Notes: generated by a model not told the origin, from the letters alone. Counted from the first letter of the stretch, positions 26,903-58,859 are shown. The stretch: 64,000 bases of DNA from Octopus bimaculoides (GCF_001194135.2 NC_068991.1:72613673-72677672); one strand, 5' to 3'. Translations and numbers: made by a program.

Positions 26903-26944
<42 letters not shown>

Positions 26945-27031: not shown

Positions 27032-27069
<38 letters not shown>

Positions 27070-27118
27070 GCTATTACCACAACCACCACCACCACCACCA
27101 CAACCACTACTACTACTA

Positions 27119-27175
<57 letters not shown>

Positions 27176-29602: not shown

Positions 29603-29649
<47 letters not shown>

Positions 29650-32270: not shown

Positions 32271-33635
32271 CTTACTCTAGAGCACTGTTGCTAAATATCT
32301 CTCGTTGAGAGAGTAACAAATCGTAATTTTCTATGGTTTCAAATTCTTGCACATACCAGCAGTTTTTACGGCAGGGCGCCAATCAATTACATCAATCCGA
32401 GTACTCATAAAGTTGAAAGCGAAGTGGACCTCGGCGAATTTGAACTCACAATGTAGAAATCCGGAAGAAACGCCATTAAACATTTTATCCGGTGTCTTAA
32501 CGATTCTGCCAGCTCGCTACCTTTCTGTTATGTATGACATATAGCGTTTGTGTCACTCTGGTGTAGATAATAATGAACTATTCTAGGGAACTTTCCGAAG
32601 TAGAGAGCATAATATACCGGTCTGTGTGTCTTAAATATTTTTCCAGAGTTCTATTACGGTAAGAGCATGTAGAATATAATATATCGTCTTGTGTGTGTGT
32701 GTTGAATATATATTCAGGCTTCAATCACAGAGTATATACAACGAAAGCCAAGGGTCTGTATGTGTTAAATATAATCCCTACAGTTGTTTTGCAGAATATA
32801 CACAACAAAGTATATCGGTCTGTGTATGTTATATACGAAGCCAAACTTCTATTGCGGACGACAGAGCATATAAAGCACAGTGAGAACATTGACCAAGTGG
32901 TTTGGGTGTTGCGCGCACATCGCCAGATCGTGATTTCGATTCCTGGACCGGGAGATACGTTGTGTTCTTGAGCAAAACATTTCATCTCACGTTACTCTGC
33001 GATCATTTCGACACTGGACGTGTGGTACACCGAGAAAAGGTGACGAGCTGGCAGAAACGTTAGCACGCCAAGCGAAATGCCTAGCGGTATTTCGTCTGCT
33101 GTGACGTTCTGAGTTCAAATTCCGCCGAGGTCGACTTTGCCTTTCATCCTNNNNNNNNNNTGTCCTTGTTTGTCCCCTCTATGTTTAGCCCCTTGTGGGC
33201 AATAAAGAAATAGGTATTTCGTCTGCTGCTACGTTCTGAGTTCAAATTCCGCCGAGGTCGACTTTGCCTTTCATCCTTTCGGGGTCGATTAAATAAGTAC
33301 CAGTTATGCACTGGGGTCGATATTATCAACTTAATCCCTTTGTCTGTCCTTGTTTGTCCCCTCTATATGTAGCCCCTTGTGGCTAGTAAAGAAATAACAC
33401 CGAGAACCGGTTCAGATAACGTCGGTTTGATGGAGAGAGAGTGAGCGAATGTACAGCACAAGCATTTGCTCCTTGTAAACCTAGAAAATATCGTTCATAC
33501 TTGTGTAGGTTGTTCAGCAACAAATCGCCGAACCGTCTTTCGAGGACTACGACAGTCTTCCGTCTTATAAAACACAATGTATTCGCTCTGTCTGTGTTAA
33601 ATGTGTCTGCAAACTTCTACTGTAGAGTATACAAT

Positions 33636-33670
<35 letters not shown>

Positions 33671-33835
33671 TAAAAGTGTGAAGATGAAAGGCAGGGTGAA
33701 GTAGGTAGAAAGATGAATAGACAGCGATAGACCGAGAGAAATAGATACAAAGAAATAGATAAATAAAGAGAAGGAAAGAAACGAATAGAGAGCGAGAGAA
33801 AAATAGAGAGATACATAGAAAGAGAGAGAGAGAGA

Positions 33836-33872
<37 letters not shown>

Positions 33873-34391
33873 GAAATAGCGTTTTGGTATCTTAACTATT
33901 GAAATAGAACAAAAAAAGAAAAACGCAGGAAATCGATTCAATTAAAGGATTATGACGTCATAGTTGATAATTTTGAAATAAAAAAAAATTACGGAGCGAT
34001 ATATTTTTATGACCAAATGAAAACTTGAAAATATCATTGTATATAAAAGAAAGAGTGTTTAGAAATCTAGAGCCAGAAAGATCATTAATGTATTAACGCT
34101 ATTGTCAAAGAGAATGAGAAGTAGGAATGGATTTGTAATGGAGATAAGTTAACGAATTTGCGAAGAAGGCAAGAAAGACAGGGCGACGTCGTTATAGACA
34201 TCTTATCTTTTATATTTGATCAAATTTATTTTTATCGATTAGTCACTGGATTGTGGCCATGCTGGAGCACCGTCTCAAAGCGTTTTGGTCGAACAAATCA
34301 ACTCCAGTTCTTATTTTTTGAGCGTTGTACTTATCATATCTCCTCTTTTGCCGAACCGCTAAGTTACGGGAAGGTAAACAAACCAACATTA

Positions 34392-34705
34392 GTTGTATGC
34401 TGTCAACTTAATGTGATAGTCTCCTGAAAGGAATAATACTACTGTTGGTTAGACACCGGAAGCTTCACCGCTTCCTGTCGGCCTTGACACATTTCCTGTG
34501 TCCTTATGTTTACAAGGGGGAGACATAAGGACACAGGAAATGTGTCAAGGCCGACAGGAAGCAGTGCAGCTTCTTAGGTCTAACCAACAGTAGTATTATT
34601 CCCTTCAGGGGACTGTCACATTAAGTTGACAGCATACAACAACTTCATCATATCACTACTGCATAAATCTTTCTGAGACATTTAGAAATGTATTATTTCT
34701 AAACA
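34392..34705. repeat. Fold-back element (~118 bp arms) with asymmetric tail
   Basis: Arms 34392-34509 and 34523-34640, about 9 mismatches. A second, inverted partial copy lies at 36087-36326. Confidence 0.9.
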
Positions 34706-35577
34706 AACATTAGTTGTCACCAGTGGATGAGGTGACAAACACAAACGCAAAGTCTCTCTCTCTCACACACACGATGGGATTCCATACAGTTTCCGTCTGT
34801 TAAATTCACTCACATGGCAGCAGTCAGGCCAGGGCCATTGTATAAGTCACTTGCCTAAGGTACCGTACAGATGGACTGACCCAGAAACCACGTGGTTGTA
34901 AAGCGAGCTTCTTAATCACGCGGTCATACCAGCGACCTTCCAGTATCTTGTATATTTAAGAGGGAGTTAGTGTATACAGCGATTTCCATGTTGGAGGCCC
35001 ACGATTAGACACTAGTATTGGTGTGATAAGATCAACACTTGTTTATGCAAGACATCATAACCATCACTATAACTATAATTATCTGTTTGTTGCCATGGTA
35101 ACTATGGCAGCTGACAGTTTCAACTTCCGTTGGTGAGGACACAGGACTCATTTCATTGACTAAAAATATACAACTTTAAATGCTTCCATCTTGTTTATTA
35201 GTAATTTTTTGGCAATATTTGTCATCAACATGCAAATCTACATCTGAGCGAAAAATTTGAAAATAATCCATTGAGAATTGAAAAATCTTCAAGTGGTTAG
35301 AAGAAGAAAATGAAAAAAGATCCCAGAAGTAGAGAATTAATTCCTTGGAGATTAATCCTCGGTGTTAATGGTATGTATGTATGTATGTATGTATGTATGT
35401 ATGTATGTATGTATGTACGTATGTATGTATGTATGTACGTATGTATGTATGTATGTGTGTATGTATGTGTATGTATGTATGTATGTATGTATGTGTGTGT
35501 GTATGTGTATGTATGTATGTATGTATGCATGAATGAATGTATGCATGTATGTATGTATGTATGTATGTATGTATGCA

Positions 35578-35610
<33 letters not shown>

Positions 35611-35766
35611 CTATGTATGTATGCATGTATGTATGTATTCATGTATGTATGTATGTTTGTCTGTATGTAATGTATGCCTTTAAGAATGTATGTATGTATG
35701 TATGTGTGTGTGTCTCTCTCTCTATCTGTCTTCTATAGATTTATATAATTTGCTAAGGGAGAGAAC

Positions 35767-35798
<32 letters not shown>

Positions 35799-35809
35799 TA
35801 GAGAGATAG

Positions 35810-35844
<35 letters not shown>

Positions 35845-37830
35845 GAGTAATGGTAGAAGATAAAAAGAGTTTGAAACAACGTTCTAGTGACGTGATAGAG
35901 AGAGAGAAGAACCAGAAAAATATGTTTCAGTTAAAGTATCACGATGTCATACACAATATATCTTAAACATTTCATACAGATTCCTTTACTGTATTCTCCA
36001 TATTTTCCAATACTTTTCTGGATTAATGAAAGCTACAATTTCTTCAAAATGAGTTGGGTGGATCATTGTAAAACAAAATACATCCAGTTTAGAAATAATA
36101 CATTTCTAAATCTCTCAGAGATTTATGCAGTAGTGATACGATGGTGTAGTTGTATGCTGACAACTTAATGTGACAGTCCCCTGAAGGGAATAATACTACT
36201 GTTGGTTAGACCTAGGAAGCTGCACTGCTTCCTGTCGGCCTTGACACATTTCCTGTGTCCTTATGCTTGTCTCCCCCTTGTAAACATAAGGACACAGGAA
36301 ATGTGTCAAGGCCGACAGGAAGCGGCGCATATGTGTAGAAGTATGTACGGTGTGTGAGTGTGAGTGTGTGTATGTGTGTGTGTGTGTGAGAGAGAGAGAG
36401 TGGGGAGGAAAGAAGGAGGGAAAGAAAGAGCAGGAGAGAGAGAAAGATAGTGAGAAGGGCAGATAGGATGGAGAGAGAGAGAGAGAGCGAGAGAGAGAGA
36501 GAGAGAGAGAAAGAGAAAAGAAAGGGAGAGACAGAGGCGAATAATATAGGAAGATATAAAATATTGATCTTGTATCCTTGGGCAAGTGTCTTCTACTAGA
36601 ATCTCGGGGCGAGTAAATTCGGTAGATAGAAACTGAAAGCACCCGCTTGTTGATTACTCACCTGTCTTTGTCTTTTGTTTTCTGTAAATTTGAACTACAC
36701 ACACACACACACATATATACACATACACACACATAGAAGATGTCTTTTCAGTTGAAGTATTATGACGTCATAGTTGACATAATCTTAAAAATTCAACTAA
36801 ATCCTCGAAATAAATTCTCGATGTTTTCCTATATTTCGATGGAGAAACGAAAGCCGTAATTCCTTCAGAATGAGTTGATTGAAACTTTGTAGTCATGAAG
36901 CCCAGCCCCATTAGGGGCTGCATGACTACGTATCAGCGGTGTTTATTCCCTTATGAACAGTCTCAGTTCTTTACCCCACCTTAATGTGTGTGTGTGTGTG
37001 TGTGAGACAGAAGGAGAGAGAAAGAGAGAGATATCAAGAGATATGAAAAGAGAGAGGGAGAAGAAGAGAGAAAGAGAGAAAGAGAGAAAGAAAAGATGGA
37101 AGGAGAGAGGTACAGTGAATGTCGTTGTTGGTGTTTTGACAATTGATGGAGAACTGTAGAAGATGCAGGGAAATCCCTGTTTCATCCACAGAATTATGAC
37201 GTCATAGATATTTTGAAAATAATTCCTCCAAATTCACCCACTATATTCTCAATATTTGCCAATATTTTATTGAATAAATAGAATCTTGAATGTATTAATA
37301 CTATGAACAATATGGCTGCAGTAAAAATACTCCAGAGAAGCTTTTTATATACTCAGTAATATGACTCCATGTATGTTGAGAATGATTTTCGGCATAGAAT
37401 GATGTTCCACAGTTTAATTTTCTTCCATATTTCAGGGACATCATTTAATTACACATTGATCGAAGCTTTTGTTGTTCTTTATCTCCAAGTGAGTTTTGAT
37501 CAAACAAAAGTATGGCGAATGGCAACCCAGCAATGACTAGTCCATTTTATATTTACGCAATATGTAGATGCCAGACTATATTTTAAATGTGTCTTTCCCT
37601 GCTAAGGACAGTAAGGTATGATATAATGGCGACTTAGATTCCTCGTAGATACACTGATGGTCATGAAATATAAACTCATTACGAAGTTTAGATTAATTGT
37701 TATGGATTATACGTGACCGCAGTGTTACTTTTTCGTAAATGATAACAGCTAAATTGTGAAATAATCTGCAAACTAGAGAGCATAATTTATCTGTCTATCT
37801 ATATGTGCCTTCGTCTATAGATTTATATAA

Positions 37831-37870
<40 letters not shown>

Positions 37871-38810
37871 NNNNNNNNNNNNNNNNNNNNNNNNNNNNNN
37901 NNNNNNNNNNNNNNNNNNNNNNNNNNNNNNNNNNNNNNNNNNNNNNNNNNNNNNNNNNNNNNNNNNNNNNNNNNGGAGAGAGAGAGAGAGGGAGGGAGAG
38001 AGAGAGAGAGGGAGGGAGAGAGAGAGAGAAGCGCGTCTGCGAGAGAGTGAAAGAGCGCAAGAGAGAGGGAGGGAGAGAGATAACAATTCGGGAAAATAAA
38101 TTATAAAATACCGTTCTTTCACCTTGATTGCGAGTGAACTAAAGAAGACGCAGGAAGATGTTTTATTGAGTTAAACTATTCTAACGTCACAGACGATATA
38201 TTTTAAATAATTAATCAAATTCCTGACCCACAAATCAATGTTTTCTACTATTTCCTTGCGTTAAGAAAATCCGAATTTTTCATCAATATTGTAAACGTAA
38301 AAAAACATCCTGCCGTGACAGTCGAGCCTGTTGTGGGAGCTGCAAGAGTATATTATGTAGATGTGCCATCGCCATTTGTAACTCAGCTTGATGTGATACG
38401 AGGGAGATTTGGCTGCTATTTCTAGCAGATGGATCGGCCACGTAGTTAACCACATTGGCTACCATAGTCACAATTCATGCAAAATTAAAACGAAACGAAC
38501 ATCACTAAACGAACAAACTGTGTCGTAACGTGAAGCGTTCAAAGCAGTTTGAAAATATGAAAGGAGAATGGTTCAAGGGTGATAACTGAAAATGAAATCT
38601 TGTGTCGATCTCTTTGAGTTATCGTTTTTTCTAGAACAGAAAATTGGACCAAATTTATAAGCGGACTAAATGTTTGACCCATTGATTTCTGCTCGGAATA
38701 AGCAACTCTTTGTTTCATTGAAATGTCGGTATATGTTAAATAAGAATTAAGTAAAAAAAAATGTAAAACAAAAGTGAAATAAAAGAATTGGTGGATCAGA
38801 TTACAAATTA

Positions 38811-39420
38811 GGCGCAGCTGTGGCTGTAGGATAAGAAGTATACTTCCCAACCACATGGTTCCGAGTTCAGTCTCATTGCGTGGCACCTTGGGCAAGTATC
38901 TTCTACTAGAATCTCGGGGCGAGTAAATTCGGTAGATAGAAACTGAAAGCACCTGCTTATTCTTCCCTCAGCTGTCTTTGTCTTTTGTTTTCTGTAAATT
39001 CGAACTACACACGGACACACACACTCTCTCTCTCACACACACACACTCACACACATACACACACACATATATACACAATACCCACACATATACACACATA
39101 CACACACACACATATAAACACACATACACACACATTCACACATACATACATACCCACTCGCATAAATACACACATACATATATATCCACTTATGTATCTG
39201 TCTTTGGTATGCGTGTGCTTACGTCCCAGTAACTTAGTGGTTCAGCAAAAGAGACCAAAAGAATAAGCACGGGGCTTAAAAACATATAAGCACTGGCGTT
39301 AATTCATTCGATTAAGAACTATTGAAGGTGGTGCCTCAGCGATTAAGAACTATTGAAGGTGGTGCCTCAGCATGGCCGCAGTTTAATGACTGAAAAAAGT
39401 AAAAGACAAAAGATAAAAGA
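38811..39420 (+). mobile_element. SINE family A variant with expanded (CA)n
   Basis: Head, core and tail present; carries a 31-bp tandem duplication at ~39310-39371. Confidence 0.8.
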
Positions 39421-40070
39421 CCAGTTTTGTAACTGTTTTTAATTCTCTATGCAACATTAAATACAAGATGCTACAGGAAATTTTAACTCTCAAACAATGT
39501 GTATAATTTTTAAAGTGAATTTTATAATTTCCTAATTTGGAAATATTTGAAATCCTCTTGGTAAAGTAAATTAGCTGTGACCAACAAAAATCTTTACGTC
39601 GGATGAAACCCACATCTCAACTGATTTCTATGTGGCTCGGGTCCCTTAGAGTGTAAGAAGTTAAGGACCGAGGCCTTGCCTGACTGGGGTGTGTTCTCTG
39701 AAGACCTTCTGCTGTTCAGCTGTCTTGAGAGTTTCTTATTATCAACTGGCCATATGTGAACATGCTAGCTGTATTGTAATGAATGTGAGTTATTAGAATT
39801 TAACAGAAAAAAGCAGCTAAAGCATAAATAGAAAAGCGAATATTTATTTGTTAGTTTTCTTGAAGGAAATTTAAAAACGAAGATTCATAATTTTCTTTCC
39901 GTATGGCGATAAACTTCTTTTAAGAGAAGTGGTAGCTTAAAGTGTTTAGAGATAGTGTTGAGAAATACGAGTGTCAGTGTGCATACGTATATGACTGCAT
40001 ACACAAACACACACGCATACAAACATGAGTACATAAACACACACACATATATACATGCATACACACACAC

Positions 40071-40113
<43 letters not shown>

Positions 40114-41983
40114 NNNNNNNNNNNNNNNNNNNNNNNNNNNNNNNNNNNNNNNNNNNNNNNNNNNNNNNNNNNNNNNNNNNNNNNNNNNNNNNNNNNNNNN
40201 NNNNNNNNNNNNNNNNNNNNNNNNNNNNNNNNNNNNNNNNNNNNNNNNNNNNNNNNNNNNNNNNNNNNNNNNNNNNNNNNNNNNNNNNNNNNNNNNNNNN
40301 NNNNNNNNNNNNNNNNNNNNNNNNNNNNNNNNNNNNNNNNNNNNNNNNNNNNNNNNNNNNNNNNNNNNNNNNNNNNNNNNNNNNNNNNNNNNNNNNNNNN
40401 NNNNNNNNNNNNNNNNNNNNNNNNNNNNNNNNNNNNNNNNNNNNNNNNNNNNNNNNNNNNNNNNNNNNNNNNNNNNNNNNNNNNNNNNNNNNNNNNNNNN
40501 NNNNNNNNNNNNNNNNNNNNNNNNNNNNNNNNNNNNNNNNNNNNNNNNNNNNNNNNNNNNNNNNNNNNNNNNNNNNNNNNNNNNNNNNNNNNNNNNNNNN
40601 NNNNNNNNNNNNNNNNNNNNNNNNNNNNNNNNNNNNNNNNNNNNNNNNNNNNNNNNNNNNNNNNNNNNNNNNNNNNNNCAGAAAAGAAAGAAACATCATA
40701 AAATGCTTATGTAATACTCTTACTCATTTACTCTTTTACTTGTTTCAGTCATTTGACTGCGGCCATGTTGGAGCACCGCCTTTAGTCGAGCTAATCGACC
40801 CAGGACGTATTCTTTGTAAGCCTAGTACTTATTCTATCGGTCTCTTTTGCCGAACCGCTAAGTTACGGGGACGTAAACACATCACCATCGGTTGTATTAT
40901 TTGTAATATTGTATTATTAGTTTACAAAAAAAAAAAATATAAGATGAAAAAATTGTCGACTTTTATTTTATTCATTATATATATTGTTTCCGGTACAAAT
41001 TAATATTACGAAGAAATATTACCGGTCCCTGGAACATTGGAAAAAGAAACTGCCGGGACGCCACATCAGATCGTTTGAGAAGCACTGATCTAGGTTACTT
41101 CTGCATTGGATGAGAGATCGGGGAAAAGAACGTGATAGGTAGACAGACAGACAAACAGACAAAGAGATAGATTGGTAGGTAGGTAGGTAGATAGGTGGAT
41201 GTATAGATAGATAAATAAATAGATAGATAGGTTGCTCGGTAGGTAGATAGATAGGTAGATAGGTAGATAGATAGACAGATAGGTGGATGTATAGATAGAT
41301 AAAAAACTAAATAGATAGATAGGTTGTTCGATAGATAGATAGACAGTTAGATAGATAGGTAGATAGATAGATAGAAAGATAGATGGATAGATAGATAGAT
41401 AGATGGGATTTCTTATTGTGAAGGAAGTATTATTGCTATGAAGAATACAGTTTCAGTAAAAACACCCCAGGGGAGCATTCTACATATTTAATAAGATTAC
41501 TCCTTATAAGTTGAGAATAATCTTCAGCATAGAACGATCTTCTACTATTACATTATCTTCTATATTTCGGAGACTTTCTTTAATTGCACATTCATTGTTC
41601 TTGTTGTTGCTGCTGATCTCCGTATCGAATGAAACGAATATATGACGCAAAGCAATCCGAGGCAAGATTATCCTGTCATTATCTAGGTGTCAGACTACAT
41701 GTGTCAACATGTTCCAATGTATCTCACCGTGTTAAGGACCCCTAAGGTGTGATGCAACGGCTATTTAGCTTCCTCGTAGGCACATTAATGGTTATGAAAT
41801 GAAGACTCGTTGACAGTTATCCAGTCTTACAGTGTAGATAAACTGTTATGACTGCAGTGACACTATTTCGTACATGATAACTAGATTGTGAAATAGTCTA
41901 GAATCTAGATAACATAATATATATGACTTCTGTATGTTGAATATATCTGCCGTCTTATTTAGATTTATGTAAATTGGAGAGGA

Positions 41984-42020
<37 letters not shown>

Positions 42021-42030
42021 CATACATACA

Positions 42031-42273
42031 TAATAATATTAGGGATAAAATCCAAAATTACAGGTAAAAACTCAATTAAAATCAATTTATTAAAAATTAA
42101 AATTAAATTAAGTTTCACAGTATAAGATATATATAAATATATAGTTTTAGGGAAAAGAACCAAGGTTCATGAACTCATCGATGAAAATCCAGTCACATAT
42201 AGAAAAATTAATAATTAAAAGCACAATAAATAAGTATAATATAATACAAAGTAAATATCATAAGATCAAGATA

Positions 42274-42280
<7 letters not shown>
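42031..42280 (+). mobile_element. Second copy of the 8170 repeat family
   Basis: taataatattaggga.aaaatccaaaattacaggtaaaaactcaattaaaatc... is colinear with 8178-8410. Confidence 0.7.
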
Positions 42281-42305
<25 letters not shown>

Positions 42306-43075
42306 NNNNNNNNNNNNNNNNNNNNNNNNNNNNNNNNNNNNNNNNNNNNNNNNNNNNNNNNNNNNNNNNNNNNNNNNNNNNNNNNNNNNNNNNNNNNNNN
42401 NNNNNNNNNNNNNNNNNNNNNNNNNNNNNNNNNNNNNNNNNNNNNNNNNNNNNNNNNNNNNNNNNNNNNNNNNNNNNNNNNNNNNNNNNNNNNNNNNNNN
42501 NNNNNNNNNNNNNNNNNNNNNNNNNNNNNNNNNNNNNNNNNNNNNNNNNNNNNNNNNNNNNNNNNNNNNNNNNNNNNNNNNNNNNNNNNNNNNNNNNNNN
42601 NNNNNNNNNNNNNNNNNNNNNNNNNNNNNNNNNNNNNNNNNNNNNNNNNNNNNNNNNNNNNNNNNNNNNNNNNNNNNNNNNNNNNNNNNNNNNNNNNNNN
42701 NNNNNNNNNNNNNNNNNNNNNNNNNNNNNNNNNNNNNNNNNNNNNNNNNNNNNNNNNNNNNNNNNNNNNNNNNNNNNNNNNNNNNNNNNNNNNNNNNNNN
42801 NNNNNNNNNNNNNNNNNNNNNNNNNNNNNNNNNNNNNNNNNNNNNNNNNNNNNNNNNNNNNNNNNNNNNNNNNNNNNNNNNNNNNNNNNNNNNNNNNNNN
42901 NNNNNNNNNNNNNNNNNNNNNNNNNNNNNNNNNNNNNNNNNNNNNNNNNGGTAGGATGTATAGGGATGGTGGTGTTAGAATGTGTAGGGATGGGGTAACG
43001 AGGGAGAGGGGTGACGATGAAAAGAGAGGGTGGAAGGGAGAAGGTGGATAGGAGTGAAGAGAGGAAGTAGGTGCT

Positions 43076-43128
<53 letters not shown>

Positions 43129-45319: not shown

Positions 45320-45367
<48 letters not shown>

Positions 45368-48556: not shown

Positions 48557-48639
<83 letters not shown>

Positions 48640-49094
48640 TAGGTAGGAGAGAAACCGAGGAAGATAAAGAGAAATAAGAAAAACCGTTGTGGTATCTTAC
48701 TGAGAGAGAAGTAAAGAAGACGCAGGAAAGTATTTTATTCCGTTAAAGTATTATGACATCAGAAACGATATATCTTTAATAATCCATCCAAATTTCTGAA
48801 CTATATTCTCAATATTTTCCAATATTTCCATGGATTAATGAAAACCACAATTCCTTCAGAATTTTTCGATTGTAGTATAGTAAAATGGAAAAACTCCTAG
48901 TCGTAACAATCCAACTTTTTACCGAGCTTGCAAGACTACGTTATTTGCTGTATTTTGTTAAGATTATTTCTAAATATAGTCTATGGAAATTATTGCCAGC
49001 ACTGACTTTTGCTACAACGTTTCGTATACGAGACGCCAGATGTAAACAAACAAACAATGAGATCGAATGCGTTTAATATATAAATTGGTAAATA

Positions 49095-49330
49095 GGTCGG
49101 CGAGCTGGCAGAATCGTTAGCACGCCGGGCGAAATGCTTAGCGGTATTTCGTCTGCCGTTACGTTCTGAGTTCAAATTCCGCCGAGGTCGACTTTGCTTT
49201 TCATCCTCTCGGGATCGATTAAATAAGTACCAGTTACGCACTGGGGTCAATGTAATCGACTTAATCCCTTTGTCTGTCTTTGTTTGTCCCCTCTACGTTT
49301 AGCCCCCCCCCGTGTGCAATAAAGAAATAA
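49095..49330 (+). mobile_element. tRNA-derived SINE family B
   Basis: GGCGAGCTGGCAGAATCG..GAGTTCAAATTCC (B-box-like), then GTCGACTTTGC.TTTCATCC..GTCGAT..AAGTACCAG. Many degraded copies near 1000, 2530, 3590, 3830, 4150, 4600, 17130, 23830, 32360, 46740 and 51972. Confidence 0.9.
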
Positions 49331-49410
49331 ATATGTAAATTGGTATATCCAATAACTTTACACTACTATGTGTGGTGGTTATTTAATAAATGTGTTCGAG
49401 GATGAATAAT

Positions 49411-49473
49411 GGGTTAGATGGGTGCTGATGAAGGGGCAAAACCCCTCGAAATATGGCATATATGCTCATTACC
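49411..49473 (+). ncRNA. Type I hammerhead ribozyme motif (Penelope-type minimal HHR)
   Basis: CTGATGA at 49425-49431, then A-GGGG-caaaacc-CCTC as stem II, GAAA at 49448-49451, near-palindromic stem III ATATG-G-CATAT, AUA cleavage triplet at 49460-49462. Stem I pairs gatgggtg with tgctcatt. Confidence 0.65.
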
Positions 49474-50457
49474 TATGTTTCATCTTCGAGCTCATTGTTT
49501 GTTGGTTTACATCTGACGTCTCGTATACAAAATGAATGAATGAATGATTCAACAGGATCCAATGAGTTGAGGGACTGTGTTCTTCTCCAGTACCTGCTTT
49601 GGCATGCTTCTAAAGCCGAATGACCTTCCTAATAAACTACTTTACAGGGTGAACTGTGCGTATTTTTCAAAGTATCAGTACTTGTACCAAAAATCGGTGT
49701 GGGCTATAATTTCTATAGATTATCTATAGAAATATTCTTAACAAAATAATATAAAACGCACTGCTAACACAGTAGAACGAGGTACTGACTTATAAAAGCA
49801 TTTGATATACTTTATAGTATTTTCTGTTTGCATAACGAAATACAACGTACCTCCATATGATTATTATTTGCTGTGTCATTTCCTTTTGAGATTATCATCT
49901 GTGTCACTATTTTTTATGTAACATAGCAGGATTCGATGTAGAGGAAATTTGGCTGCTACTTCTTGCAAATCTAGCGACCATGTAGAGTTTTCCTCCTTGG
50001 CTGTCATAGTAGCTGTCGACATCGTATTCTTTTATTCTTGTACATGTTTCAGTCATTTGACTGCAGCCATGCTGGAGCACAAAAAAAAAACTAAGCTAAA
50101 TGAGCATCGCTAAATGAACAACATATCTTGATTTTGGAATAGTCAAGAATTAATTATCTTTATTATCAAAGCTGCAATGATAATAATAATGATAAATTAA
50201 TGCAATGAAAGTAATAAAAATAATAAAAAATTATACAAAAAGTAAAACAAATTAATAAAAAATCCATTCGGGTATTCGATATCTTTAAAACTCATTTAGG
50301 GCGATTGTAGATGCACTTTTATAGATGTGCATTAAAAAAATCAACGTTGAGAGGTATTTTATGGGTTAAATTGCAATGTAAAAAACAATCATGTGGTTTG
50401 AAAACGTGCATTTAAAAGTAATAGTTACAATAAAATAATGAAAATAAAAATAATAAA

Positions 50458-50820
50458 AACAAGAGCACTCAGAGAGCGCAAACCTCTACCAAAGCAACGC
50501 CAACGATTAGCCAGAGATGATTTTTAAAATGATAATATCTGAAATAAACTCGACTGCTCTCACAAATGAGAATACTAAAAATGAACCCGACCGCTCTCAA
50601 AAATTAAGTAAAACAACAGCAAAAATAATCCAGAATCCTTGTCCGGTACTGGATCAATCCCAAAATCTATTCGGTTCGTACCAGTCATGAGGCCAAACAT
50701 CCCTGAAAGTTTCATCCGAATTCATCCAGCGGTTCTTGAGATATCTTGTCCATGGACAAACAAATAAACAAACAAACACGGCTGAAAACAATATTTCTGC
50801 CTTCGCTAAGGCGGACGTAA
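50458..50820 (+). mobile_element. Non-autonomous DINE-1/HINE-like (Helentron-associated) element
   Basis: Starts AACAAGAGC, has an internal (CAAA)n tract and a 3' stem-loop GCCTT-cgct-AAGGC. This architecture matches molluscan DINE-like elements. Confidence 0.55.
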
Positions 50821-50829
50821 TAATAATAA

Positions 50830-51270
50830 AAATAGTTTGTATCCAGTCGAAGGTTTTCATGGAAGGCGAAAATGTAAAATGAATGTTATAATGGTGCCCG
50901 TTTTTAGGTGAAAAAGTCAAGTTCAAATGCGAAAGTCAATGTTACCCGTACGGTATTTTTCCGCTTCACATTTTATACTTCGTGGTATGTCTGCAGGAAT
51001 TTAAAGGCTGCCGTCTTTGGTTCAGTGCGTATTTATCCTGCAACAGGACGAAAAACTTTTCAGTCAGGCACAAATTGTGCCTCATTGGGCCTCTATATGC
51101 TCCATGTTTATATGGTGCTGCTTTCTCCAAGATTGTCCAGCTGATTTTGAAAGGACGAGTATCACTTTCTTTTAACTGCCAGACATATTTAGCGAGACTC
51201 GTTGCTGTCCTATTTTCAGAGTATCGAAATGAATTTCGATGAGAATATAATGTAGTCTTGAAGGAATTTT
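50830..51270 (-). mobile_element. Penelope-like element, C-terminal GIY-YIG endonuclease fragment
   Basis: [51 protein letters not shown] resembles the C-terminal half of Penelope/Neptune endonucleases. Confidence 0.8.
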
Positions 51271-51328
51271 CCATCCATCCATCCATCCATCCATCCATCC
51301 ATCCATCCATCCATCCATCCATCCATCC

Positions 51329-51390
<62 letters not shown>

Positions 51391-53003
51391 TTGTCTGTCT
51401 GTCTGTCTGTCTGTCTGTTAAATATATGCCATCTTTCATTGATATATATATATACATTACGCACATAGGAAGTGTAAACGAAAGAAAGAGAAAGAGAGAG
51501 AGCGAGCGTGAGAGAAGGAAGGTTGGAGTGAGGAAGATAAAAAGATAATGAAATACCATAAAGAAGACATGAATTCTTTTTTCAGTAAAAGAGTTATGAC
51601 GTCACAGACAATTTATTTTAAATATTTCAATCAAATTACCGAAATGTATTCTAAACTTTGTTGTGTCTAGGGAGAGTCATTAAACAGTAAGTCATTTGTT
51701 TTGGTTTTACTTGTCAAAGCTCTTTCGTTGTTACTTGCAACCTTTTCCATGACTTTTTTTTTACCAAAATAAACAGACAATCGATTAATTAGTTGCTGGC
51801 TAATAATAAAGTAGTGAAATTGAATCAGTGCGTGTGTTAGTAGTAGTGACACAATGACTTCCCTAGACACAACAAAATTTGTTTTAACACACGAGTTCAC
51901 ATAAAGAATCTTGCAAACCAAATACAAAAGCAATGTATTCTAGATATTTTCCAATATTTCCATGGATTAAGGTGGCGAGCTGGCAGAATCGTTAGCACGC
52001 CGGGAAAATTATTTAGCAGCATTTCGTCTGTATTTACGTCCTGAGTTCAAACTCCGCGGAGGACGACTTTGCCTTTCATCCTTTCGATGTAGCAAAAATC
52101 TTGACGTTTGGTGGATCCTCAGTTGTACTGATACTAACATGGAAACTATATGTGGACGCTATAAGTTGTACTGTACGGAAAGTATCTCATTAAAATTTAA
52201 CAATGGTAAATGAATATTTATTTGTAAGTTTTGTTGAGAGAAAGATTCATAATTTTCTTTCCTGTTTTTGTTATAAATTTCTTTTAAAAGTAGTGGTGGC
52301 TTAATTTCTTTAAAGGTCGTGCTGAGATGTATGTGTGCGTCTGTGTAGACACATAACCACATATACACATTCCCACTCGTGTACATACACCCGCATTCAT
52401 ACAAACACATACATACATACATACATATATACATCAGGTAAGAGTGAGAGATTGCAGAAAGAAACAGTGATACAATGCTGTGAAATTGTACGTTCTTTTT
52501 TTCACGACAAACTGTTCAATAATAAATTGAATCGTAAAATGACTGGGAAAAAAATAATCATTCAAGTGTTTTTCGAAATGATTGAATGGAAGAAACTGAG
52601 GTGAACTGTGCTCATGAGTCGTCTAGGTTACTTGCGATATATAGCTAGATAGATAGATAGATAGAATAGCTAGATAGACAGACAGATAGAAAGACAGACC
52701 AACATACAGGCGGACTGACAGATCAATAGATAGATGGGATTTCCCATTGTGATGAAAGTAACTTATTAAAATACAAGAGAGGAAAATGATTGGTTGCTGT
52801 TGTTGCCGTTTTTGTTTATTTCCAGGTTAGTTTTGGCCAATCTAATGCACGATGAGAGGCAATCCAGCCATGTCTCGCCTGCTTATTTTATTCACGCAAT
52901 GTGTCGGGGTAAGGACTACATGCTCCATTCTGCGTTTTCGTGTTAAAATGTTGGATATGATATGATGACGATTTAGTTGCCACAGAGATGGCTACGAAAT
53001 ATT

Positions 53004-53178
53004 CTTTTCTACTCTAGGCACAAGGCCCGAAAGTTTTGGGGAAGGGGTCAGTTGATTAGATCGACCCTAGTATGCAACTGATACTTAATTTATCGACCCC
53101 GAAAGGATGAAAGGCAAAATCGACCTCGGCGGAATTTGAACTCAGAACGTGCTAACGTTTCTGCCAGCTCACCGCCTT
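53004..53178 (-). mobile_element. SINE family B with 17-bp target-site duplication
   Basis: gatggctacgaaatatt occurs at 52987-53003 and 53179-53195. Confidence 0.9.
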
Positions 53179-54059
53179 GATGGCTACGAAATATTGGCCA
53201 ATTCATGAGTATCAATTGCTATAAAGTGAAGATGAATTGTTTTGGGCTATACATTGCTGTTCGTACAAAACAGCTATACTCTGGAATCGCCTAGAAACTA
53301 GGCAAAATAATACATCTGTCCATTTATGTTAAAATATCTCTCGTCACCTATAGATTTATGTATATTGCAGAGAGAGAGAGGGAGGGAAGAAGGGAGATAG
53401 ATAGATAGATAGAGAGAGAAAGAGAGGGAGAGAGAAAGTGTGAGAGAAAACGGAGAAGGACTGAGTAGAAGAGAGAACGGAGAGAGACAAAGCGTGAGAA
53501 AACGAATAGTTGCAGACGAGAAAGAGACGATAAAACACCTTCCCGTGCCTTGCTAGAGAAGTAGAGAAATTCCGTTTGGTGTCACAGTTTTAAAACGTCA
53601 TAGACGGTATATTTCAAAGCGGTTTAAAAGTATGAAAATTAAAATATTCAGGGGCGGTAACTCGAAAGGAAATGTTACATTGTCTCTCTCTTTGAGAAAC
53701 CCTGTCTTCTGGGACAAAATTTGGAACGAATTTCATTATGAGGTTGGCTGGTGTCAACGTGGAAGCTTCTTTGTTGTCTTTATGAATTCATCAAAATTCC
53801 GGAACTACATTCTGAACAGCTTCCAATATTTACATGATTAGCTAAAAGCTGTAATTTCTTCGAAATGAGTTTGCTGAACATTGTAAAAACAGGAAACCTC
53901 CTGCCGTATCAATCCATTCTTTTAGTGGTGATGCAAAACTACATTATCAACAATATCATTTCCTTATGTAACACAGTATGAAATGATACAAGAGATATTT
54001 GACTGCTACTTCTAACAGATCGCGTGACCACGTGGTATTTTCTTCATTGCTTCACAATG

Positions 54060-54520
54060 GTCACTATGGGTAAATAATAACCTTAGCATATCCCAATCAC
54101 AGTAAAATGAACAAAAGCAGTATTATAAAAAAACTGAAGCAACTCAAAGATCCATCCCAAGAAAAATATTCGATATCACTAGTTTTGATTAATGGGATCT
54201 TCTCGAGAATCTCAACCTTTATTCCCTCCAACGCCGCAGCATCAAATGATGTTGGCATCAACTTTCAAATTCATCTACGGCTTGGTCCCCGTACCATCCG
54301 TCCTCTATAAAAATCATACTCGCATCACATCACAACACTACGACCGAGCAATTTCACCTCAACTGGCCCTGCTCTCTTTAACATCATGCCAAGACATAAG
54401 AGGAGAAAAAGATTTTATAACATTCAAACAGTTCCTGGATGAATGTCTCCAACAAATTCAAGAGAAACCACCTACACGCGGGCAATAACTCTTTACTACA
54501 ATGAGTTATGGAGCCCAAAG
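54060..54520 (+). mobile_element. Degraded CR1/L2-like LINE 3' end
   Basis: TFKFIYGLVP...FKQFLDECLQQIQEKPPTRG followed by NSL-like sequence. Interrupts the module array. Confidence 0.55.
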
Positions 54521-54702
54521 AATGACTGTAATATGAAACTTTATTAGTTTTCTCGTCAGCATTTTGAAGGTTAAGAAAAATAGACTCATTGACGGATATC
54601 TATTTTTACGAAGTTTAGATGAACATATACTTAGCTGCACTGTTACTTTTCTCGTACATACCAGTTATATTTTGGGATAATTTACAAACTAAAGAACATT
54701 AG

Positions 54703-54756
<54 letters not shown>

Positions 54757-54781
54757 GTCTGTCTTTCTGTCTGTTTTTCTG

Positions 54782-54844
<63 letters not shown>

Positions 54845-55065
54845 CTTCTCACGGACGTGCTGTCACATCGGCTGCGAAGGTAAACGTTTATTTGACCTTT
54901 TACTGTCCACATTTTGTTGGAATTTTTTAATAATTTTGTTGCGAAGCACCTAGGCTTCATTTGTGTGTATTTTCAAGGGCAGGAATTGACNNNNNNNNNN
55001 NNNNNNNNNNNNNNNNNNNNNNNNNNNNNNNNNNNNNNNNNNNNNNNNNNNNNNNNNNNNNNNNT

Positions 55066-55115
55066 AGAGAGAGAAAGAGAACGTGTGTGTGTGCGTGTAT
55101 GTGTGAATGTGTGTG

Positions 55116-55146
<31 letters not shown>

Positions 55147-55229
55147 AAGAGAACGTGTGTGTGTGTGCGTGTATGTGTGAATGTGTTTGTGTGTGCGTGC
55201 GTGTGTGAGAGAGAAAGAACGTGTGTGTA

Positions 55230-55262
<33 letters not shown>

Positions 55263-55278
55263 AAGAACGTGTGTGTGT

Positions 55279-55315
<37 letters not shown>

Positions 55316-55325
55316 GAGAGAGAGA
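55066..55325. repeat. Compound minisatellite of (GA)n-aagaac-(GT)n units
   Basis: gaaaga(ga)acgtgtg recurs 4 times at ~60 bp spacing. Confidence 0.8.
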
Positions 55326-56022
55326 GTGTGTAATAGTGGGAGATAAAATGATTATGAAATAGCGTTTTGGTATCTGCCATTGAAAGCGACTAAAGAAGAC
55401 GCAGGAACATATTTTATTCCGTTTAAACTATTCTAACGCCATAAACGATGTATTTGAAATATTCCATCCGAAATTTCCCAACTACATTCTCAATATAATA
55501 TTTTCCAATATTTCCCTGGATAAATGAAAACCGCAGTTTCTTCATCATCGTATGAATGCAATATTGTAAAATTAGAAGACTTCCAGCTGTAAGAACCCCA
55601 CCTTTTAAGGAGCCGACAAGACTACATTATCAGCTGTGTCATTTCCTAACATAATGCAGCATGATGTGATGTAGTGAAGATTTAACTGTTAATTTAGTAG
55701 ATTTAGCATCACTTAGTTTTCCTCATGGGGTGTCATAGTCACAGTAGAACCTGTAAGCAATAAAACTAAACTTCAATCGTCGCTAAATGAACAAATAAAA
55801 TACCATTGCTCTGTAGAAATGTACAGCGGTCAAAGCGGTTTGGAAATATGGAAGTCGTGAAAGATTCAGGGAAGATAACTCCGGATGAAACGTCTGAATT
55901 GCCATTTCTTCTTGGACGGAGTGTGGGACGAATTTTATAGGGGAACTGGCAGCGGTAGCATCGATAAGAACTGCATCAATGATAATGGCAACAATAACAA
56001 CAGCAACATCAACAATAACATA

Positions 56023-56431
56023 GGCGCAGGAGTGGATGTGTGGTAAGTAGCTTGCTTACCAACCACATGGTTCCGGGTTCAGTCCCTTTGCGTGGCACCT
56101 TGGGCAAGTCTCTTCTTCTATAGCCTCGGGCCGACCAAAGCCTTGTGAGTGGATTTGGTAGACGGAAACTGAAAGAAGCGCGTCGTATATATGTATATGT
56201 ACATGTGTATATATATGTTTGTATGTCTATGTTTATTCCCCCAACATCGCTTGACAACCGATGCTGGTGTGTTTAGGTCCCTGTAACATAGCGGTTCGGC
56301 AAAAGAGACCGATAGAATAAGTACTAAGTTTACAAAAGAATAAGTCCTGGGGTCGATTTGCTCGACTATAAAGGCGGTGCTCCAGCATGGCCGCAGTCAA
56401 ATGACTGAAACAAGTAAAAGAGTAAAAGAGT
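56023..56431 (+). mobile_element. tRNA-derived SINE family A (CORE-like segment), near full length
   Basis: tRNA-like head GGCGCAGGAGTGG..GGTTCAGTCCC, CACCTTGGGCAAGT core, internal (TA/TG)n, (GTAAAAGA)n tail. More degraded copies near 3270, 7285, 15440, 20690, 34240 and 40715. Confidence 0.9.
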
Positions 56432-57228
56432 AATAATAACAACAACAACAACAACAATGACGAAAAGGACAACGATGACAAATCCTGACGAAAGATTAGA
56501 CTCGATTCTGTCCTCGTATCTGCATTAAAATGAATTTCTGCTGAAGAGGTCTAATAATACACAAACATGCTACCAGTTTTCTCCCTGCATGCTAAACATA
56601 AAGTAAACTCGCTTACTTCATATCCTTATTGAAATTCATTTTCACTGATTTCAATTTGTCGTGCGTTGTTTTGCCGGTTGTTTTTAAGTTCGTTATCGCA
56701 AATGTCTCTCATTTATTAGCCTAGTAAATTGTATAAATTAAAAGTTTAAAGAATATATATTTTCAGCTCATTGTCTCATGTATGACAGGCTGCACTTAAC
56801 TTTGAGTTCTCTATGCAGAGGGTTGCCTTTGTGTAATAATGCATGGGCCTTGGTTAGTGTAGCGTTGCTGATGTGTTAGGTATTGTAACGTAACCGGGAT
56901 GTATGTGTGGATGTTTGTACAGTATATGTGTGTGATGCGTATGTGTGTGTGAGAGTGTGTGTATCTGTGCGTATCAGTGTGCATCTNNNNNNNNNNTGTG
57001 TAACTGTGTGTGAGTGTGTGTGTGTGTGTATGTGTGAGTGTGTGTGAGTGTGTGTGTGTGTGTGAGTGTGCACGTGTGTGTGTGCGTGAGTGTCGGTGTG
57101 TGTACGCATATAAGAGATAGAAACAGAGGAGGTAAGAAAAAGAAAGGAAGAAGGGAAGAAAGAGAGGGAGACAGTGAGATAGAGGGGAAGAGAGAGAAAG
57201 AAAGCGAGCAAGAGGGAGATAGAGATAG

Positions 57229-57278
<50 letters not shown>

Positions 57279-57844
57279 TGTGTATGGGACGATAGGGAAA
57301 CTATGAACATCGTTTTTGGTCTCTTCACAATTAAATCCGAACTAAAGAAGAGACAAAGAAAGGATTGTTTCAGTTTACGGAATTATGACGTCATAGGTAC
57401 ATCAAATATAATTCCTCCAATTCCTTTACTGTATTCCTACTATTTACCAATATTTCATTGAATAAGTAGAAACTCCAATGTATTGTTATAGACAATATGG
57501 CTGCTGTACAAATACCCGAGGGGGGCGTTCTATATTCTGCGTTACATCACTCCATGTAATTATATTAACTTTTCAGCATAGAAGGATCTTCCACAATTTC
57601 GTTTTTTTTCCATAAGTTAAAGGATATTATTTAATAATACGTTGATCGAAGTTGTTGTGGCTGTTCTTCACCTCCAGGTCAATTTTTGTCAGTCAAATGT
57701 ATGATGAAAAGCAATGCAGCCATGGCTGTTCCGTCTTATATTCGCACAATGTGTAGGTGTCGGATTGTGTCTTTCCGTGTCAAGGACAGTAAGGCTTGAT
57801 ATGGAAGCAATTTAACACATTGGTTGTTACGATATATTATCGTG

Positions 57845-58100
57845 TTGATGGCCGTCCATTTTTACGATGTGTAAGAATGGTGGGTGCCACCGCTCACAAA
57901 CAAGATTGCAAAGGAACAAAGAATACGCGAGCTGGGCAAATCCAGAGCCAAATAATCGCCAGCAGACTATTAATGCCCGACCTGTGACAGATCCTTCCGA
58001 GCAGGCATCGGACCGATCGGCCACAGCCGGGCACACCGTACTTCATCTTCTCCCATCTGATGTCCTTGGTCATCGTCTGCAACGACGGATGAACTAAGAC
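57845..58100 (+). mobile_element. RTE LINE 3' end inserted in an array module
   Basis: C-terminal zinc-finger-like CPTCDRSFRAGIGPIGHSRAH, then a short 3' UTR gtcatcgtc..gacggatgaac. Confidence 0.7.
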
Positions 58101-58302
58101 GAATTGTTATGAAGTATAAAAAGCTGAACTGTCACTTTTTCGCATCGTGATTACAACTACATTCTGTAATAATCTACAACCTAAAGAACATGATCTATCT
58201 ATCTATCTATCTGACTGGCTTGCTGGCTGGCTGGCTGGCTGGCTTTCTGTCTGTCGTCTCCTATAGATTTATATAAATTGTAGGGAGAGCAAAACAAAGA
58301 AA

Positions 58303-58396
<94 letters not shown>

Positions 58397-58859
58397 AGAG
58401 AGAGAGAGAGAGCGCGCGTAAGAGGGAGAGAGAGTAAGTGTGTGAGGCAGAGATAGAATGAGAGAAGAAAGATTGGAAATAAGAGAGGAAAAGAAAGGTA
58501 CTATGAAATACCGTCCTCGTATCACGACTGAGAAGACGCCGGAAAAATTTCATTTTGAGTTAAAAGTATTATGACGTAAGACATGTGGTTTGTAAACATG
58601 AAAGTTGAAAGATTCCAGGAAAATAACTCAAAATGAAACGTTCCCTATCCTCTTTAAGTTACCTATTTTTACTGGGACAGAATTTGGAACGAATTATATA
58701 ACGAGTTTGGTTACATCTAATGAGGAAGCCTCTTTGTTGACCTTACGGATTCATCTAAATTCTCGGAACTATATTCTCGATATTTTCCAATATTTCTATG
58801 GATTATGAAAATCCGCAGATCTTTTCTGTTGCTTTATTTTTTAATTTTTAAAAAAATTT

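What the first reader, a model, noticed from the sequence alone, without database searches (positions are those of the whole stretch)
33540..58820. ~25 kb array of degenerate modules with a fixed order, not matching any element family I recognise
Seen: a long module Y (about 37115-37835, 43345-44040, 47865-48540, 57295-58280; tails at 41400-41980, 52735-53370, 54520-54700) is repeatedly followed by (GA)n and then a shorter module X (about 33870, 35850, 38085, 44200, 48670, 53520, 55345, 58495). X and Y share their first ~150 bp. Further modules recur at 39860, 45010, 45630, 52200 and at 45395, 52470. All copies point the same way, are strongly diverged, and carry later SINE and LINE insertions, so the array is old. 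No copy occurs in the first 33 kb. Inference: an ancient tandem amplification that may be a regulatory array, a decayed gene cluster or a complex satellite.
Basis: partly seen in the sequence, partly recalled or inferred. Interest (0 to 1): 0.75.

Follow-up and report, generated by a model that had tools for sequence, protein, structure and literature searches.

The report
Old decayed non-coding tandem repeat array
A 25-kb stretch is an ancient head-to-tail multiplication of a non-coding block built from four recurring modules, now 25-30% diverged and invaded by mobile elements; it is real, but nothing shows that it does anything.

Summary
From about 33.7 to 58.8 kb the + strand carries 7 copies or part-copies of a ~750-bp module Y and 8 copies of a ~700-bp module X, plus two lone X-type heads. 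There are also 4 copies of Z and 3 of W. All point the same way, and Y -> (GA)n -> X holds wherever the sequence is uninterrupted. X and Y are old paralogues. They share a ~170-190-bp head and a second ~90-bp block in the body. All four module types are about equally diverged (K2P about 0.25-0.4), so whole blocks were copied in one period and then decayed independently. Dated later insertions exist, including a SINE with a perfect 17-bp target-site duplication inside one Y. No module shows an open frame, codon periodicity, a Pfam domain, an Rfam or tRNA match, or a conserved RNA fold. Best reading: an old, decayed higher-order tandem repeat (macrosatellite-like), probably neutral. One open hint is the head, which is modestly better conserved (p=0.002) and holds all six TGACGTCA octamers of the window. 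No eukaryote genome or repeat library was available, so genome-wide copy number and TE membership remain untested.

The parts
33701..58830 (+). Whole directional array of modules Y, X, Z and W with (GA)n spacers
   Evidence: Of the 25.5 kb, about 10.6 kb is array-specific direct repeats, 3.5 kb is dispersed repeats (SINE-like, foldback), at least 1.5 kb is microsatellite, 1.4 kb is gaps and 8.5 kb is unassigned, including LINE fragments.
37111..37842 (+). Y1, full length, followed by (AG)n and gap 37871-37974
   Evidence: nhmmer E 2e-223, profile positions 4-758
41423..41984 (+). Yp, 5'-truncated Y (profile 181-758), preceded by (AGAT)n and a W remnant
43160..44046 (+). Y2 with a duplicated head (43160-43341), then full Y (43338-44046)
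47869..48542 (+). Y3, full length
   Evidence: E 4e-191
52799..53375 (+). Y5, partial Y (profile 355-758), split by a 174-bp SINE at 53006-53179 with a perfect 17-bp target-site duplication GATGGCTACGAAATATT
54529..54742 (+). Y6, tail fragment of Y (profile 513-716), running into (TATC)n
57297..58288 (+). Y4, full Y interrupted by a ~235-bp GC-rich insertion (about 57801-58035)
33867..33979 (+). X1, head only
35859..36087 (+). X2, head plus the start of the body (profile 7-249)
36736..36955 (+). Lone X-type head h36 (profile 70-314)
38086..38750 (+). X3, long copy; a tRNA-derived SINE follows
44201..44698 (+). X4, with an internal ~180-bp insertion
48663..50121 (+). X5, in two pieces (48663-49085 and 49863-50121) split by a SINE and other repeat insertions
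51559..51653 (+). Lone head h51
53510..54123 (+). X6, rearranged: head part 1, then block E (53614-53736, X profile 495-616), then head part 2 and the body
55342..56008 (+). X7, long copy; a SINE follows at 56008-56433
58495..58821 (+). X8, with the same rearrangement as X6 (E block at 58585-58701)
39773..40072 (+). Z copy 1, ending in (AC)n at gap 40114-40678
   Evidence: E 2e-66
45024..45868 (+). Z - (GA)n - W (45402-45695) - Z' (45652-45868) block of the Y2 unit
52170..52795 (+). Z (52170-52434) and W (52479-52795) of the Y3 unit, abutting Y5
41086..41428 (+). Partial W, expanded by (AGAT)n
31861..31942 (-). Short Y-like fragment (profile 359-441), inverted, 1.8 kb before the array
   Evidence: E 1.6e-5
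60030..60232 (-). Fragment like both Y and X (Y profile 336-544; X profile 281-374), inverted, 1.2 kb after the array
   Evidence: E 9e-11
45870..47560 (.). LINE fragments inserted between Z' and Y3: a + strand zf-RVT-like tail at 45870-46640 and a - strand RT C-terminal ORF at 47142-47549

Best explanation
The region is an old, locally amplified, non-coding higher-order tandem repeat, i.e. a decayed macrosatellite.

Inferred history:
1. A primordial unit of (GA)n, a ~180-bp head and a ~550-bp body duplicated and diverged into the X and Y types.
2. Blocks containing Y-(GA)n-X were then copied head to tail several times within one period. In the central zone the blocks also carried Z-(GA)n-W.
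3. The likely mechanism is unequal exchange or replication slippage seeded by the microsatellites that sit at every module junction, or a single rolling-circle-type burst.
4. The copies were not homogenised afterwards. They drifted to about 25-30% difference and lost parts by deletion and microsatellite expansion.
5. They were later invaded by SINEs, LINE fragments and a foldback element.

Shown here: the structure, the common orientation, the equal divergence of the module types, the non-coding nature and the later insertions. Inferred: the duplication mechanism and the present lack of function.
For: - Orientation: 108 direct against 16 inverted self-matches inside the array, compared with 148 against 142 elsewhere.
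- Order: six of the seven Y copies are followed by an X copy; in five the intervening sequence is an uninterrupted GA-rich spacer or has a gap lying inside (GA)n, and in Y6 -> X7 a (TATC)n tract, unassigned sequence and gap 54991-55064 intervene. The seventh (Yp) runs into an (AT)n run, a dispersed repeat and a 644-N gap. X->Z(->W) recurs in three units.
- Divergence is equal across linked modules: K2P for Y is 0.27-0.36, X 0.31-0.43, Z 0.23-0.38 and W 0.25. This is expected if blocks were copied together.
- X6 and X8 share the same internal rearrangement, and their similarity runs from the Y tail across (GA)n into X.
- X and Y are paralogous in the head and in a second block.
- Not coding and not a known RNA.
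- Insertions are younger than the array. One SINE has a perfect 17-bp TSD inside Y5. SINE copies are 82-92% alike, while modules are about 70-75% alike.
- It is not an assembly artefact of duplicated reads, because the copies differ by 25% or more.
Against: - No eukaryote genome, Dfam or Repbase library, or reads were available. I could not test whether Y or X also occurs as a dispersed family elsewhere.
- Two short inverted Y-like fragments lie just outside the array. These would fit a once-mobile family or local rearrangements.
- Y is flanked by (GA)n on both sides, and three Y copies lack their 5' part. This also fits insertion of a retroposon into a microsatellite.
- The head is modestly more conserved than the body: mismatch 0.224 against 0.305, p=0.002. 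That is not expected for purely neutral decay.
Confidence: 0.6

Rival explanations
1. Y and X are non-autonomous retroposons that share an end and target or prime on GA/TC microsatellites, as Kibi LINEs target (TC)n. Repeated strand-specific insertion into one long (GA)n tract built the array.
For: - Every head is preceded by a GA-rich tract, and every Y tail is followed by one.
- All copies share one orientation relative to the purine strand.
- Truncated copies exist: tail-only Yp, Y5 and Y6, and head-only X1, X2, h36, h51 and Y2a.
- X and Y share one end, as LINE/SINE partners do.
- Two inverted fragments lie outside the array.
- Microsatellite-specific non-LTR elements, including (TC)n-specific Kibi, are documented (PMC3812793).
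Against: - The strict Y->X alternation, and the co-occurrence of the unrelated modules Z and W in a fixed order with the same divergence, are not expected from independent insertions.
- Truncations occur at both ends, so there is no clean 5'-truncation signature.
- No RT or endonuclease ORF and no partner LINE sharing the end is seen in the window.
- No further copies occur in the other 38 kb, although (GA)n tracts exist there, for example at 18.8 kb.
Confidence: 0.13
2. The array is functional. It would be a tandemly multiplied cis-regulatory or promoter module ((GA)n + CRE-like TGACGTCA + CCAAT-containing head), or a unidirectional source of non-coding or small RNAs.
For: - The head is the most often retained part: 15 copies, in both X and Y.
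- It is better conserved than the body (0.224 against 0.305, p=0.002).
- All six TGACGTCA octamers in the 64 kb lie in heads, where about 0.7 would be expected by composition.
- The array lies in a CpG-retaining domain (o/e about 0.5-1.0) next to a strongly CpG-depleted, probably gene-body-methylated, domain.
- The copies are arranged in one direction.
Against: - The octamers are inherited from one ancestral head, so they are not independent events. Only 6 of 15 heads keep the full palindrome.
- The difference in conservation is small and could reflect composition.
- There is no conserved RNA structure and no Rfam family.
- Many heads are truncated or rearranged.
- No expression or chromatin data could be consulted.
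Confidence: 0.1
3. The modules are the internal tandem repeats, or fragments, of a large or composite mobile element, for example a Helentron/HINE-like satellite carrier or nested LTR-type ends.
For: - Mollusc Helentron derivatives carry tandem repeats next to microsatellites (PMC7492417).
- The Y consensus has a weak, imperfect ~26-bp terminal inverted repeat: score 14 against 8.2 +/- 1.7.
- Inverted fragments lie outside the array.
Against: - Units are 0.7-5 kb, not 140-180 bp.
- No subterminal inverted repeat is seen for X; a 3' palindrome was not scanned for.
- No transposase, Rep/helicase or RT domain belongs to the unit.
- The array ends within the window with no recognisable element termini.
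Confidence: 0.1
4. It is a decayed cluster of tandemly duplicated protein-coding genes.
For: Tandem units of 2-5 kb are typical of gene clusters. A few short ORFs fall in the same frame in several X heads.
Against: - Every frame of every Y has at least 7 stops, and no third-position periodicity is seen in Y or in the 15 heads.
- No Pfam hit in six frames of a Y+X unit.
- The head ORF has no relative in the 5.8-billion-protein index.
Confidence: 0.03
5. It is a scaffolding or assembly artefact.
For: There are five gaps inside 25 kb, all at microsatellites.
Against: - Copies differ by 25-30% and carry private insertions. Collapsed or duplicated reads cannot produce that.
- Five units are read Y->(GA)n->X without interruption or with a gap lying inside the (GA)n spacer.
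Confidence: 0.03

Closest known systems
Macrosatellites / higher-order tandem repeats (e.g. human D4Z4, DXZ4; from general knowledge)
   Same: Kilobase-scale units arranged head to tail at one locus. The units are composite, built of sub-modules, and microsatellites sit at the junctions.
   Different: Known macrosatellites are kept homogeneous (usually above 90% identity) and vary in copy number. Here the copies are 25-30% diverged, truncated and invaded, so the array stopped turning over long ago. No ORF like DUX4 is present, and no chromatin data are available.
Cg_HINE / pearl: Helentron-derived non-autonomous elements carrying satellite-like repeats in bivalves (PMC7492417)
   Same: A mollusc genome, tandem repeats combined with a microsatellite, and non-coding sequence.
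   Different: HINE monomers are 140-180 bp, arrays mostly have 5 monomers or fewer, and the microsatellite has a 4-nt motif and sits in the left flank only. HINEs also have subterminal inverted repeats and a 3' palindrome, and are dispersed in both orientations. Here the units are 0.7-5 kb, (GA)n precedes every unit, the arrangement is one 25-kb array in one direction, and there are no clear termini.
Microsatellite-targeting non-LTR retrotransposons (Kibi in (TC)n, Koshi, Waldo, Mino, Dong; PMC3812793)
   Same: Elements flanked on both sides by the same microsatellite, in one orientation relative to the repeat strand, with some truncated copies.
   Different: No RT or endonuclease ORF and no partner LINE. 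The order is fixed and includes the unrelated modules Z and W. Truncations occur at both ends.

Membership tests
Macrosatellite / higher-order tandem repeat | Units of about 1 kb or more repeated head to tail in one orientation at one locus | tested here: met
   7 Y, 8 X plus 2 lone heads, 4 Z and 3 W, all on the + strand within 25 kb.
Macrosatellite / higher-order tandem repeat | Sub-modules recur in a fixed order (higher-order unit) | tested here: met
   Six of seven Y copies are followed by an X copy, five of them across an uninterrupted or gap-in-(GA)n spacer. X->Z(->W) is seen in three units. Divergence is equal across module types.
Macrosatellite / higher-order tandem repeat | Copies confined to one or a few loci; array homogenised and variable in copy number | not testable with these tools
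   No genome of the species and no reads were available. Within the window the copies are not homogenised (K2P about 0.3).
Classical satellite DNA | Many near-identical monomers in long arrays | tested here: not met
   About 7-10 units at 25-30% divergence. TRF finds only microsatellites.
Microsatellite-specific non-LTR retroposon (Kibi-like) or its SINE | Flanked on both sides by the target microsatellite | tested here: met
   (GA)n lies on both sides of the full-length Y copies Y1, Y2, Y3 and Y4.
Microsatellite-specific non-LTR retroposon (Kibi-like) or its SINE | Constant 3' end with variable 5' truncation | tested here: inconclusive
   Three tail-only Y copies, but also five head-only copies.
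Microsatellite-specific non-LTR retroposon (Kibi-like) or its SINE | RT/APE ORF, or a partner LINE sharing the 3' end; independent insertions in other microsatellite tracts | tested here: not met
   No domain in six frames. No copies in the other 38 kb of the window. The genome-wide test was not possible.
Helentron/HINE-borne satellite | 140-180-bp monomers between flanks that carry subterminal inverted repeats and a 3' palindrome | tested here: not met
   Units are 0.7-5 kb. Only a weak imperfect inverted repeat in Y (z about 3.4) and none in X. Compare PMC7492417.
Tandem protein-coding gene cluster (decayed) | Residual ORFs, codon-position bias of substitutions, protein-domain similarity | tested here: not met
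Tandem structured-RNA genes (tRNA, snRNA, miRNA, hammerhead retrozymes) | Match to an RNA family, or a conserved fold with covariation | tested here: not met
   Rfam at the gathering threshold gave 0 hits. Sub-threshold hits fall only on microsatellites and the foldback element, none in a module core. ARAGORN gave 0. RNAalifold on 13 heads predicted 0 pairs.

The most novel reading that the evidence does not exclude
The ~15 heads ((GA)n + TGACGTCA palindrome + CCAAT-containing block) are a tandemly multiplied cis-regulatory or promoter module that has been under weak constraint since the amplification. Under this reading the array is an ancient cephalopod enhancer/promoter cluster, or a unidirectional non-coding or small-RNA source, lying beside a methylated gene body.
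Probability: 0.1. Interest if true: 0.6.

Novelty: new member of a known kind. Interest (0 to 1): 0.3.

Why it matters
If it is only a decayed macrosatellite, it matters little. It would be one more example of how microsatellite-bounded blocks are multiplied and then left to erode in a repeat-rich mollusc genome. It would also be a useful caution for repeat annotation, because such arrays look like unknown element families. It would matter more if the better-conserved head with its CRE-like site proved to be bound or transcribed. It would also matter more if Y and X proved to be a microsatellite-targeting retroposon family, which is not known to me from cephalopods.

Tried and rejected
There are no read-depth, gap-closure or RNA data.
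- External homologues:
  - The 60-aa head ORF against the protein index gave no candidate.
  - Exact look-up of 10 window ORFs found none in the collection.
  - A conserved 25-mer of Y gave 0 hits in metagenome, prokaryote-genome and viral contigs.
  - The pattern CRE + gap + CCAAT block gave 0 hits in metagenomes.
  - The RT-tail ORF of an inserted LINE hits only unnamed ENA metagenome proteins at 59% identity or less, so it did not identify the organism.
- Coding: the consensus translates to stops in all frames. Pfam on six frames gave nothing above noise. No codon periodicity.
- RNA: Rfam at the gathering threshold and in E-value mode, ARAGORN and RNAalifold gave nothing in the module cores. 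The sub-threshold miRNA hits are CA/TA microsatellites, apart from hairpin matches on the foldback element at 34.5 and 36.2 kb.
- 'Y is younger than X': the first MSA-based distances suggested this. It disappeared with pairwise alignments, so it was rejected as an alignment artefact.
- Shared SINE after X3 and X7 as a marker of block duplication: the junctions are not alignable, so it is undecided.
- Literature searches for cephalopod satellites or tandem arrays found nothing specific.
- The bacterial promoter/terminator scan was not used, because it does not apply to a eukaryote.


Full report
**Context.** The window is AT-rich (about 36% G+C) draft eukaryote sequence with 13 N-gaps. It contains tRNA-derived SINEs in many copies and both orientations, and LINE reverse-transcriptase remnants. 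From memory, the SINE consensus resembles the abundant octopus SINE. That is a lead only, and I could not confirm the organism. The best protein hits of the LINE ORF are unnamed metagenome sequences at 59% identity or less.

- Y is about 750 bp. Full copies lie at 37111, 43338, 47869 and 57297. The last is split by a ~235-bp insertion.
- Y part-copies lie at 41423, 52799/53152 and 54529.
- X lies at 33867, 35859, 38086, 44201, 48663, 53510, 55342 and 58495, with lone heads at 36736 and 51559 and a duplicated Y head at 43160.
- Z lies at 39773, 45024, 45652 and 52170.
- W lies at 45402 and 52479, with a remnant at 41086-41428.

E-values run from 1e-223 down to about 1e-7. Inside the array, direct self-matches outnumber inverted ones by 108 to 16 (22.7 kb against 1.7 kb). 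The inverted ones are all dispersed-repeat pieces (SINE-like, foldback). In the rest of the window the ratio is 148 to 142. About 42% of the 25.5 kb is array-specific direct repeat. The rest is dispersed repeats (SINE-like, foldback), LINE fragments, microsatellites, gaps and unassigned sequence.

**Gaps.** As asked, I looked at the gaps first in terms of sequence.

- 37871-37974 has (GA)n on both sides. It sits exactly where ungapped units have the (GA)n spacer between the Y tail and the X head.
- 56987-56996 lies in a GT-rich tract.
- 40114-40678 follows a (CA)n run.
- 42306-42949 follows an (AT)n run.
- 54991-55064 precedes a GA/GT compound microsatellite.

Nothing in the module order is broken across any gap. 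The array cannot be a duplication artefact, because its copies differ by 25-30% and carry private insertions.

**Anatomy.** Every unit begins with a GA-rich microsatellite, often preceded by (GT)n. A ~170-190-bp head follows and is shared by X and Y. The head contains a palindromic TGACGTCA. About 70 bp downstream lies a conserved block, TTTTCCAATATTTC.

Beyond the head, X and Y share a second block. Y consensus 465-551 matches X consensus 281-369, with a local score of 23.5 against 13.2 +/- 1.8 in shuffles. The same block is hit by both profiles in the inverted fragment at 60.0-60.2 kb. X and Y are therefore old paralogues of a single unit of (GA)n, head and body.

The array has three zones:
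- 33.7-37 kb: X-type heads only.
- 37-53 kb: units of 4.3-6 kb in the order Y-(GA)n-X-...-Z-(GA)n-W(-Z').
- 53-58.8 kb: plain Y-(GA)n-X dimers, 1.6-3.3 kb apart.

X6 and X8 share an internal rearrangement, with the E block moved between the two halves of the head. Their similarity runs from the Y tail through (GA)n into X.

**History.** With pairwise alignments, all module types show the same divergence: Y 0.27-0.36, X 0.31-0.43, Z 0.23-0.38 and W 0.25 substitutions per site. An earlier impression that Y is younger than X was an artefact of forcing poor multiple alignments. Equal divergence together with fixed order is what block duplication predicts. The roughly star-like distances suggest amplification within one period and no homogenisation afterwards.

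Later events are visible:
- A 174-bp tRNA-type SINE sits inside Y5 with a perfect 17-bp target-site duplication.
- SINEs interrupt or follow X3, X5 and X7.
- LINE fragments lie between Z' and Y3.
- There is a 235-bp insertion in Y4.
- A young foldback element lies at 34392-34640, with a second copy at 36087-36329.

SINE copies are 82-92% alike, while modules are about 70-75% alike, so the array predates them.

**What it is not.**
- Not coding. The consensus and every copy carry stops in all frames, at least 7 per frame per Y. Substitutions show no three-base periodicity in Y or in the 15 heads. Six-frame Pfam found nothing, and the head ORF has no relative in the protein index.
- Not a known or structured RNA. 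There were no Rfam matches at the gathering threshold. Sub-threshold hits fall only on microsatellites and the foldback element, never in a module core. There are no tRNAs, and 13 heads give no consensus fold.
- Not found in any collection I could scan. That says little, because none of these collections holds animal genomes.

**Best explanation and rivals.** The best-supported reading is a decayed higher-order tandem repeat (macrosatellite-like). It would have been made by unequal exchange or slippage between the microsatellites that bound every module, or by one rolling-circle-type burst, and it is now eroding neutrally (confidence about 0.6).

The main rival is a retroposon pair that primes on GA/TC microsatellites, as Kibi LINEs do on (TC)n (PMC3812793).
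- In its favour: Y is flanked by (GA)n on both sides, some copies are truncated, and two inverted Y-like fragments lie just outside the array.
- Against it: the strict Y->X alternation, the co-amplified unrelated modules Z and W, truncations at both ends, and the absence of any RT or partner LINE.

A Helentron/HINE-type satellite carrier (PMC7492417) differs in monomer size and in its overall organisation. A weak imperfect 26-bp inverted repeat at the ends of the Y consensus (z about 3.4) remains unexplained.

A functional reading cannot be excluded.
- The head is somewhat better conserved than the body, 0.224 against 0.305 mismatch, p=0.002.
- All six TGACGTCA octamers in the 64 kb lie in heads.
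- However, these sites are inherited rather than independent, only 6 of 15 heads keep the palindrome, and the effect is small.

**Verdict.** 'Ancient tandem amplification' is supported, 'decayed gene cluster' is not supported, and 'regulatory array' is untested. In kind, this is an ordinary if elaborate old tandem duplication in a repeat-rich genome. Its sequence family could not be compared with repeat libraries. Interest is 0.3.

Noticed in passing
window 1-64000 (boundary at about 24-28 kb): There is a sharp CpG boundary. CpG observed/expected is 0.15-0.32 in every 2-kb bin from 1 to 24 kb, while GpC o/e stays near 1 in nearly every bin. It then rises through 0.42 and 0.63 to 0.5-1.27 from 28 to 64 kb. 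This looks like a germline-methylated domain, possibly a gene body, abutting an unmethylated domain that contains the whole array.
   Followed up: partly
window 25988-27453 and 29245-30573: A large inverted repeat: 25988-26758 against 30573-29811 (89% over 785 bp), continuing at 26811-26957 / 29755-29605 and 27029-27453 / 29662-29245. Long trinucleotide runs lie at 26.85-27.23 kb, and gaps at 26759-26810 and 27488-27497. It sits at the CpG boundary.
   Followed up: no
window 34392-34640 and 36087-36329: A young foldback (MITE-like) element with 118-nt arms that are 92% complementary and a 13-nt loop. A second, partial copy is 94.6% identical in inverted orientation, and the two bracket X2. It accounts for the sub-threshold miRNA-like Rfam hits at 34.5 and 36.2 kb.
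   Followed up: partly
window 53006-53179: A tRNA-derived SINE on the minus strand with a perfect 17-bp target-site duplication, GATGGCTACGAAATATT, inserted in Y5. Related copies lie at 7.7, 11.3, 13.5, 25.6, 33.2, 49.1 and 62.6 kb.
   Followed up: partly
window 57801-58035: A ~235-bp GC- and CpG-rich insertion inside Y4, of unknown origin. It has no Pfam hit and no similar sequence elsewhere in the window.
   Followed up: partly
window 50966-51334 (minus strand): An ORF remnant of about 120 aa containing ...[13 protein letters not shown]..., preceded by a (GGWMD)n-coding repeat. It has no Pfam hit and is probably part of an unclassified mobile element inserted between X5 and the next Z.
   Followed up: no
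window 38751-38958 and 56008-56433: Both long X copies (X3 and X7) are followed by the same tRNA-derived SINE family, in the same orientation and at a similar distance. The junctions do not align, so it is undecided whether this is one shared insertion or two.
   Followed up: partly
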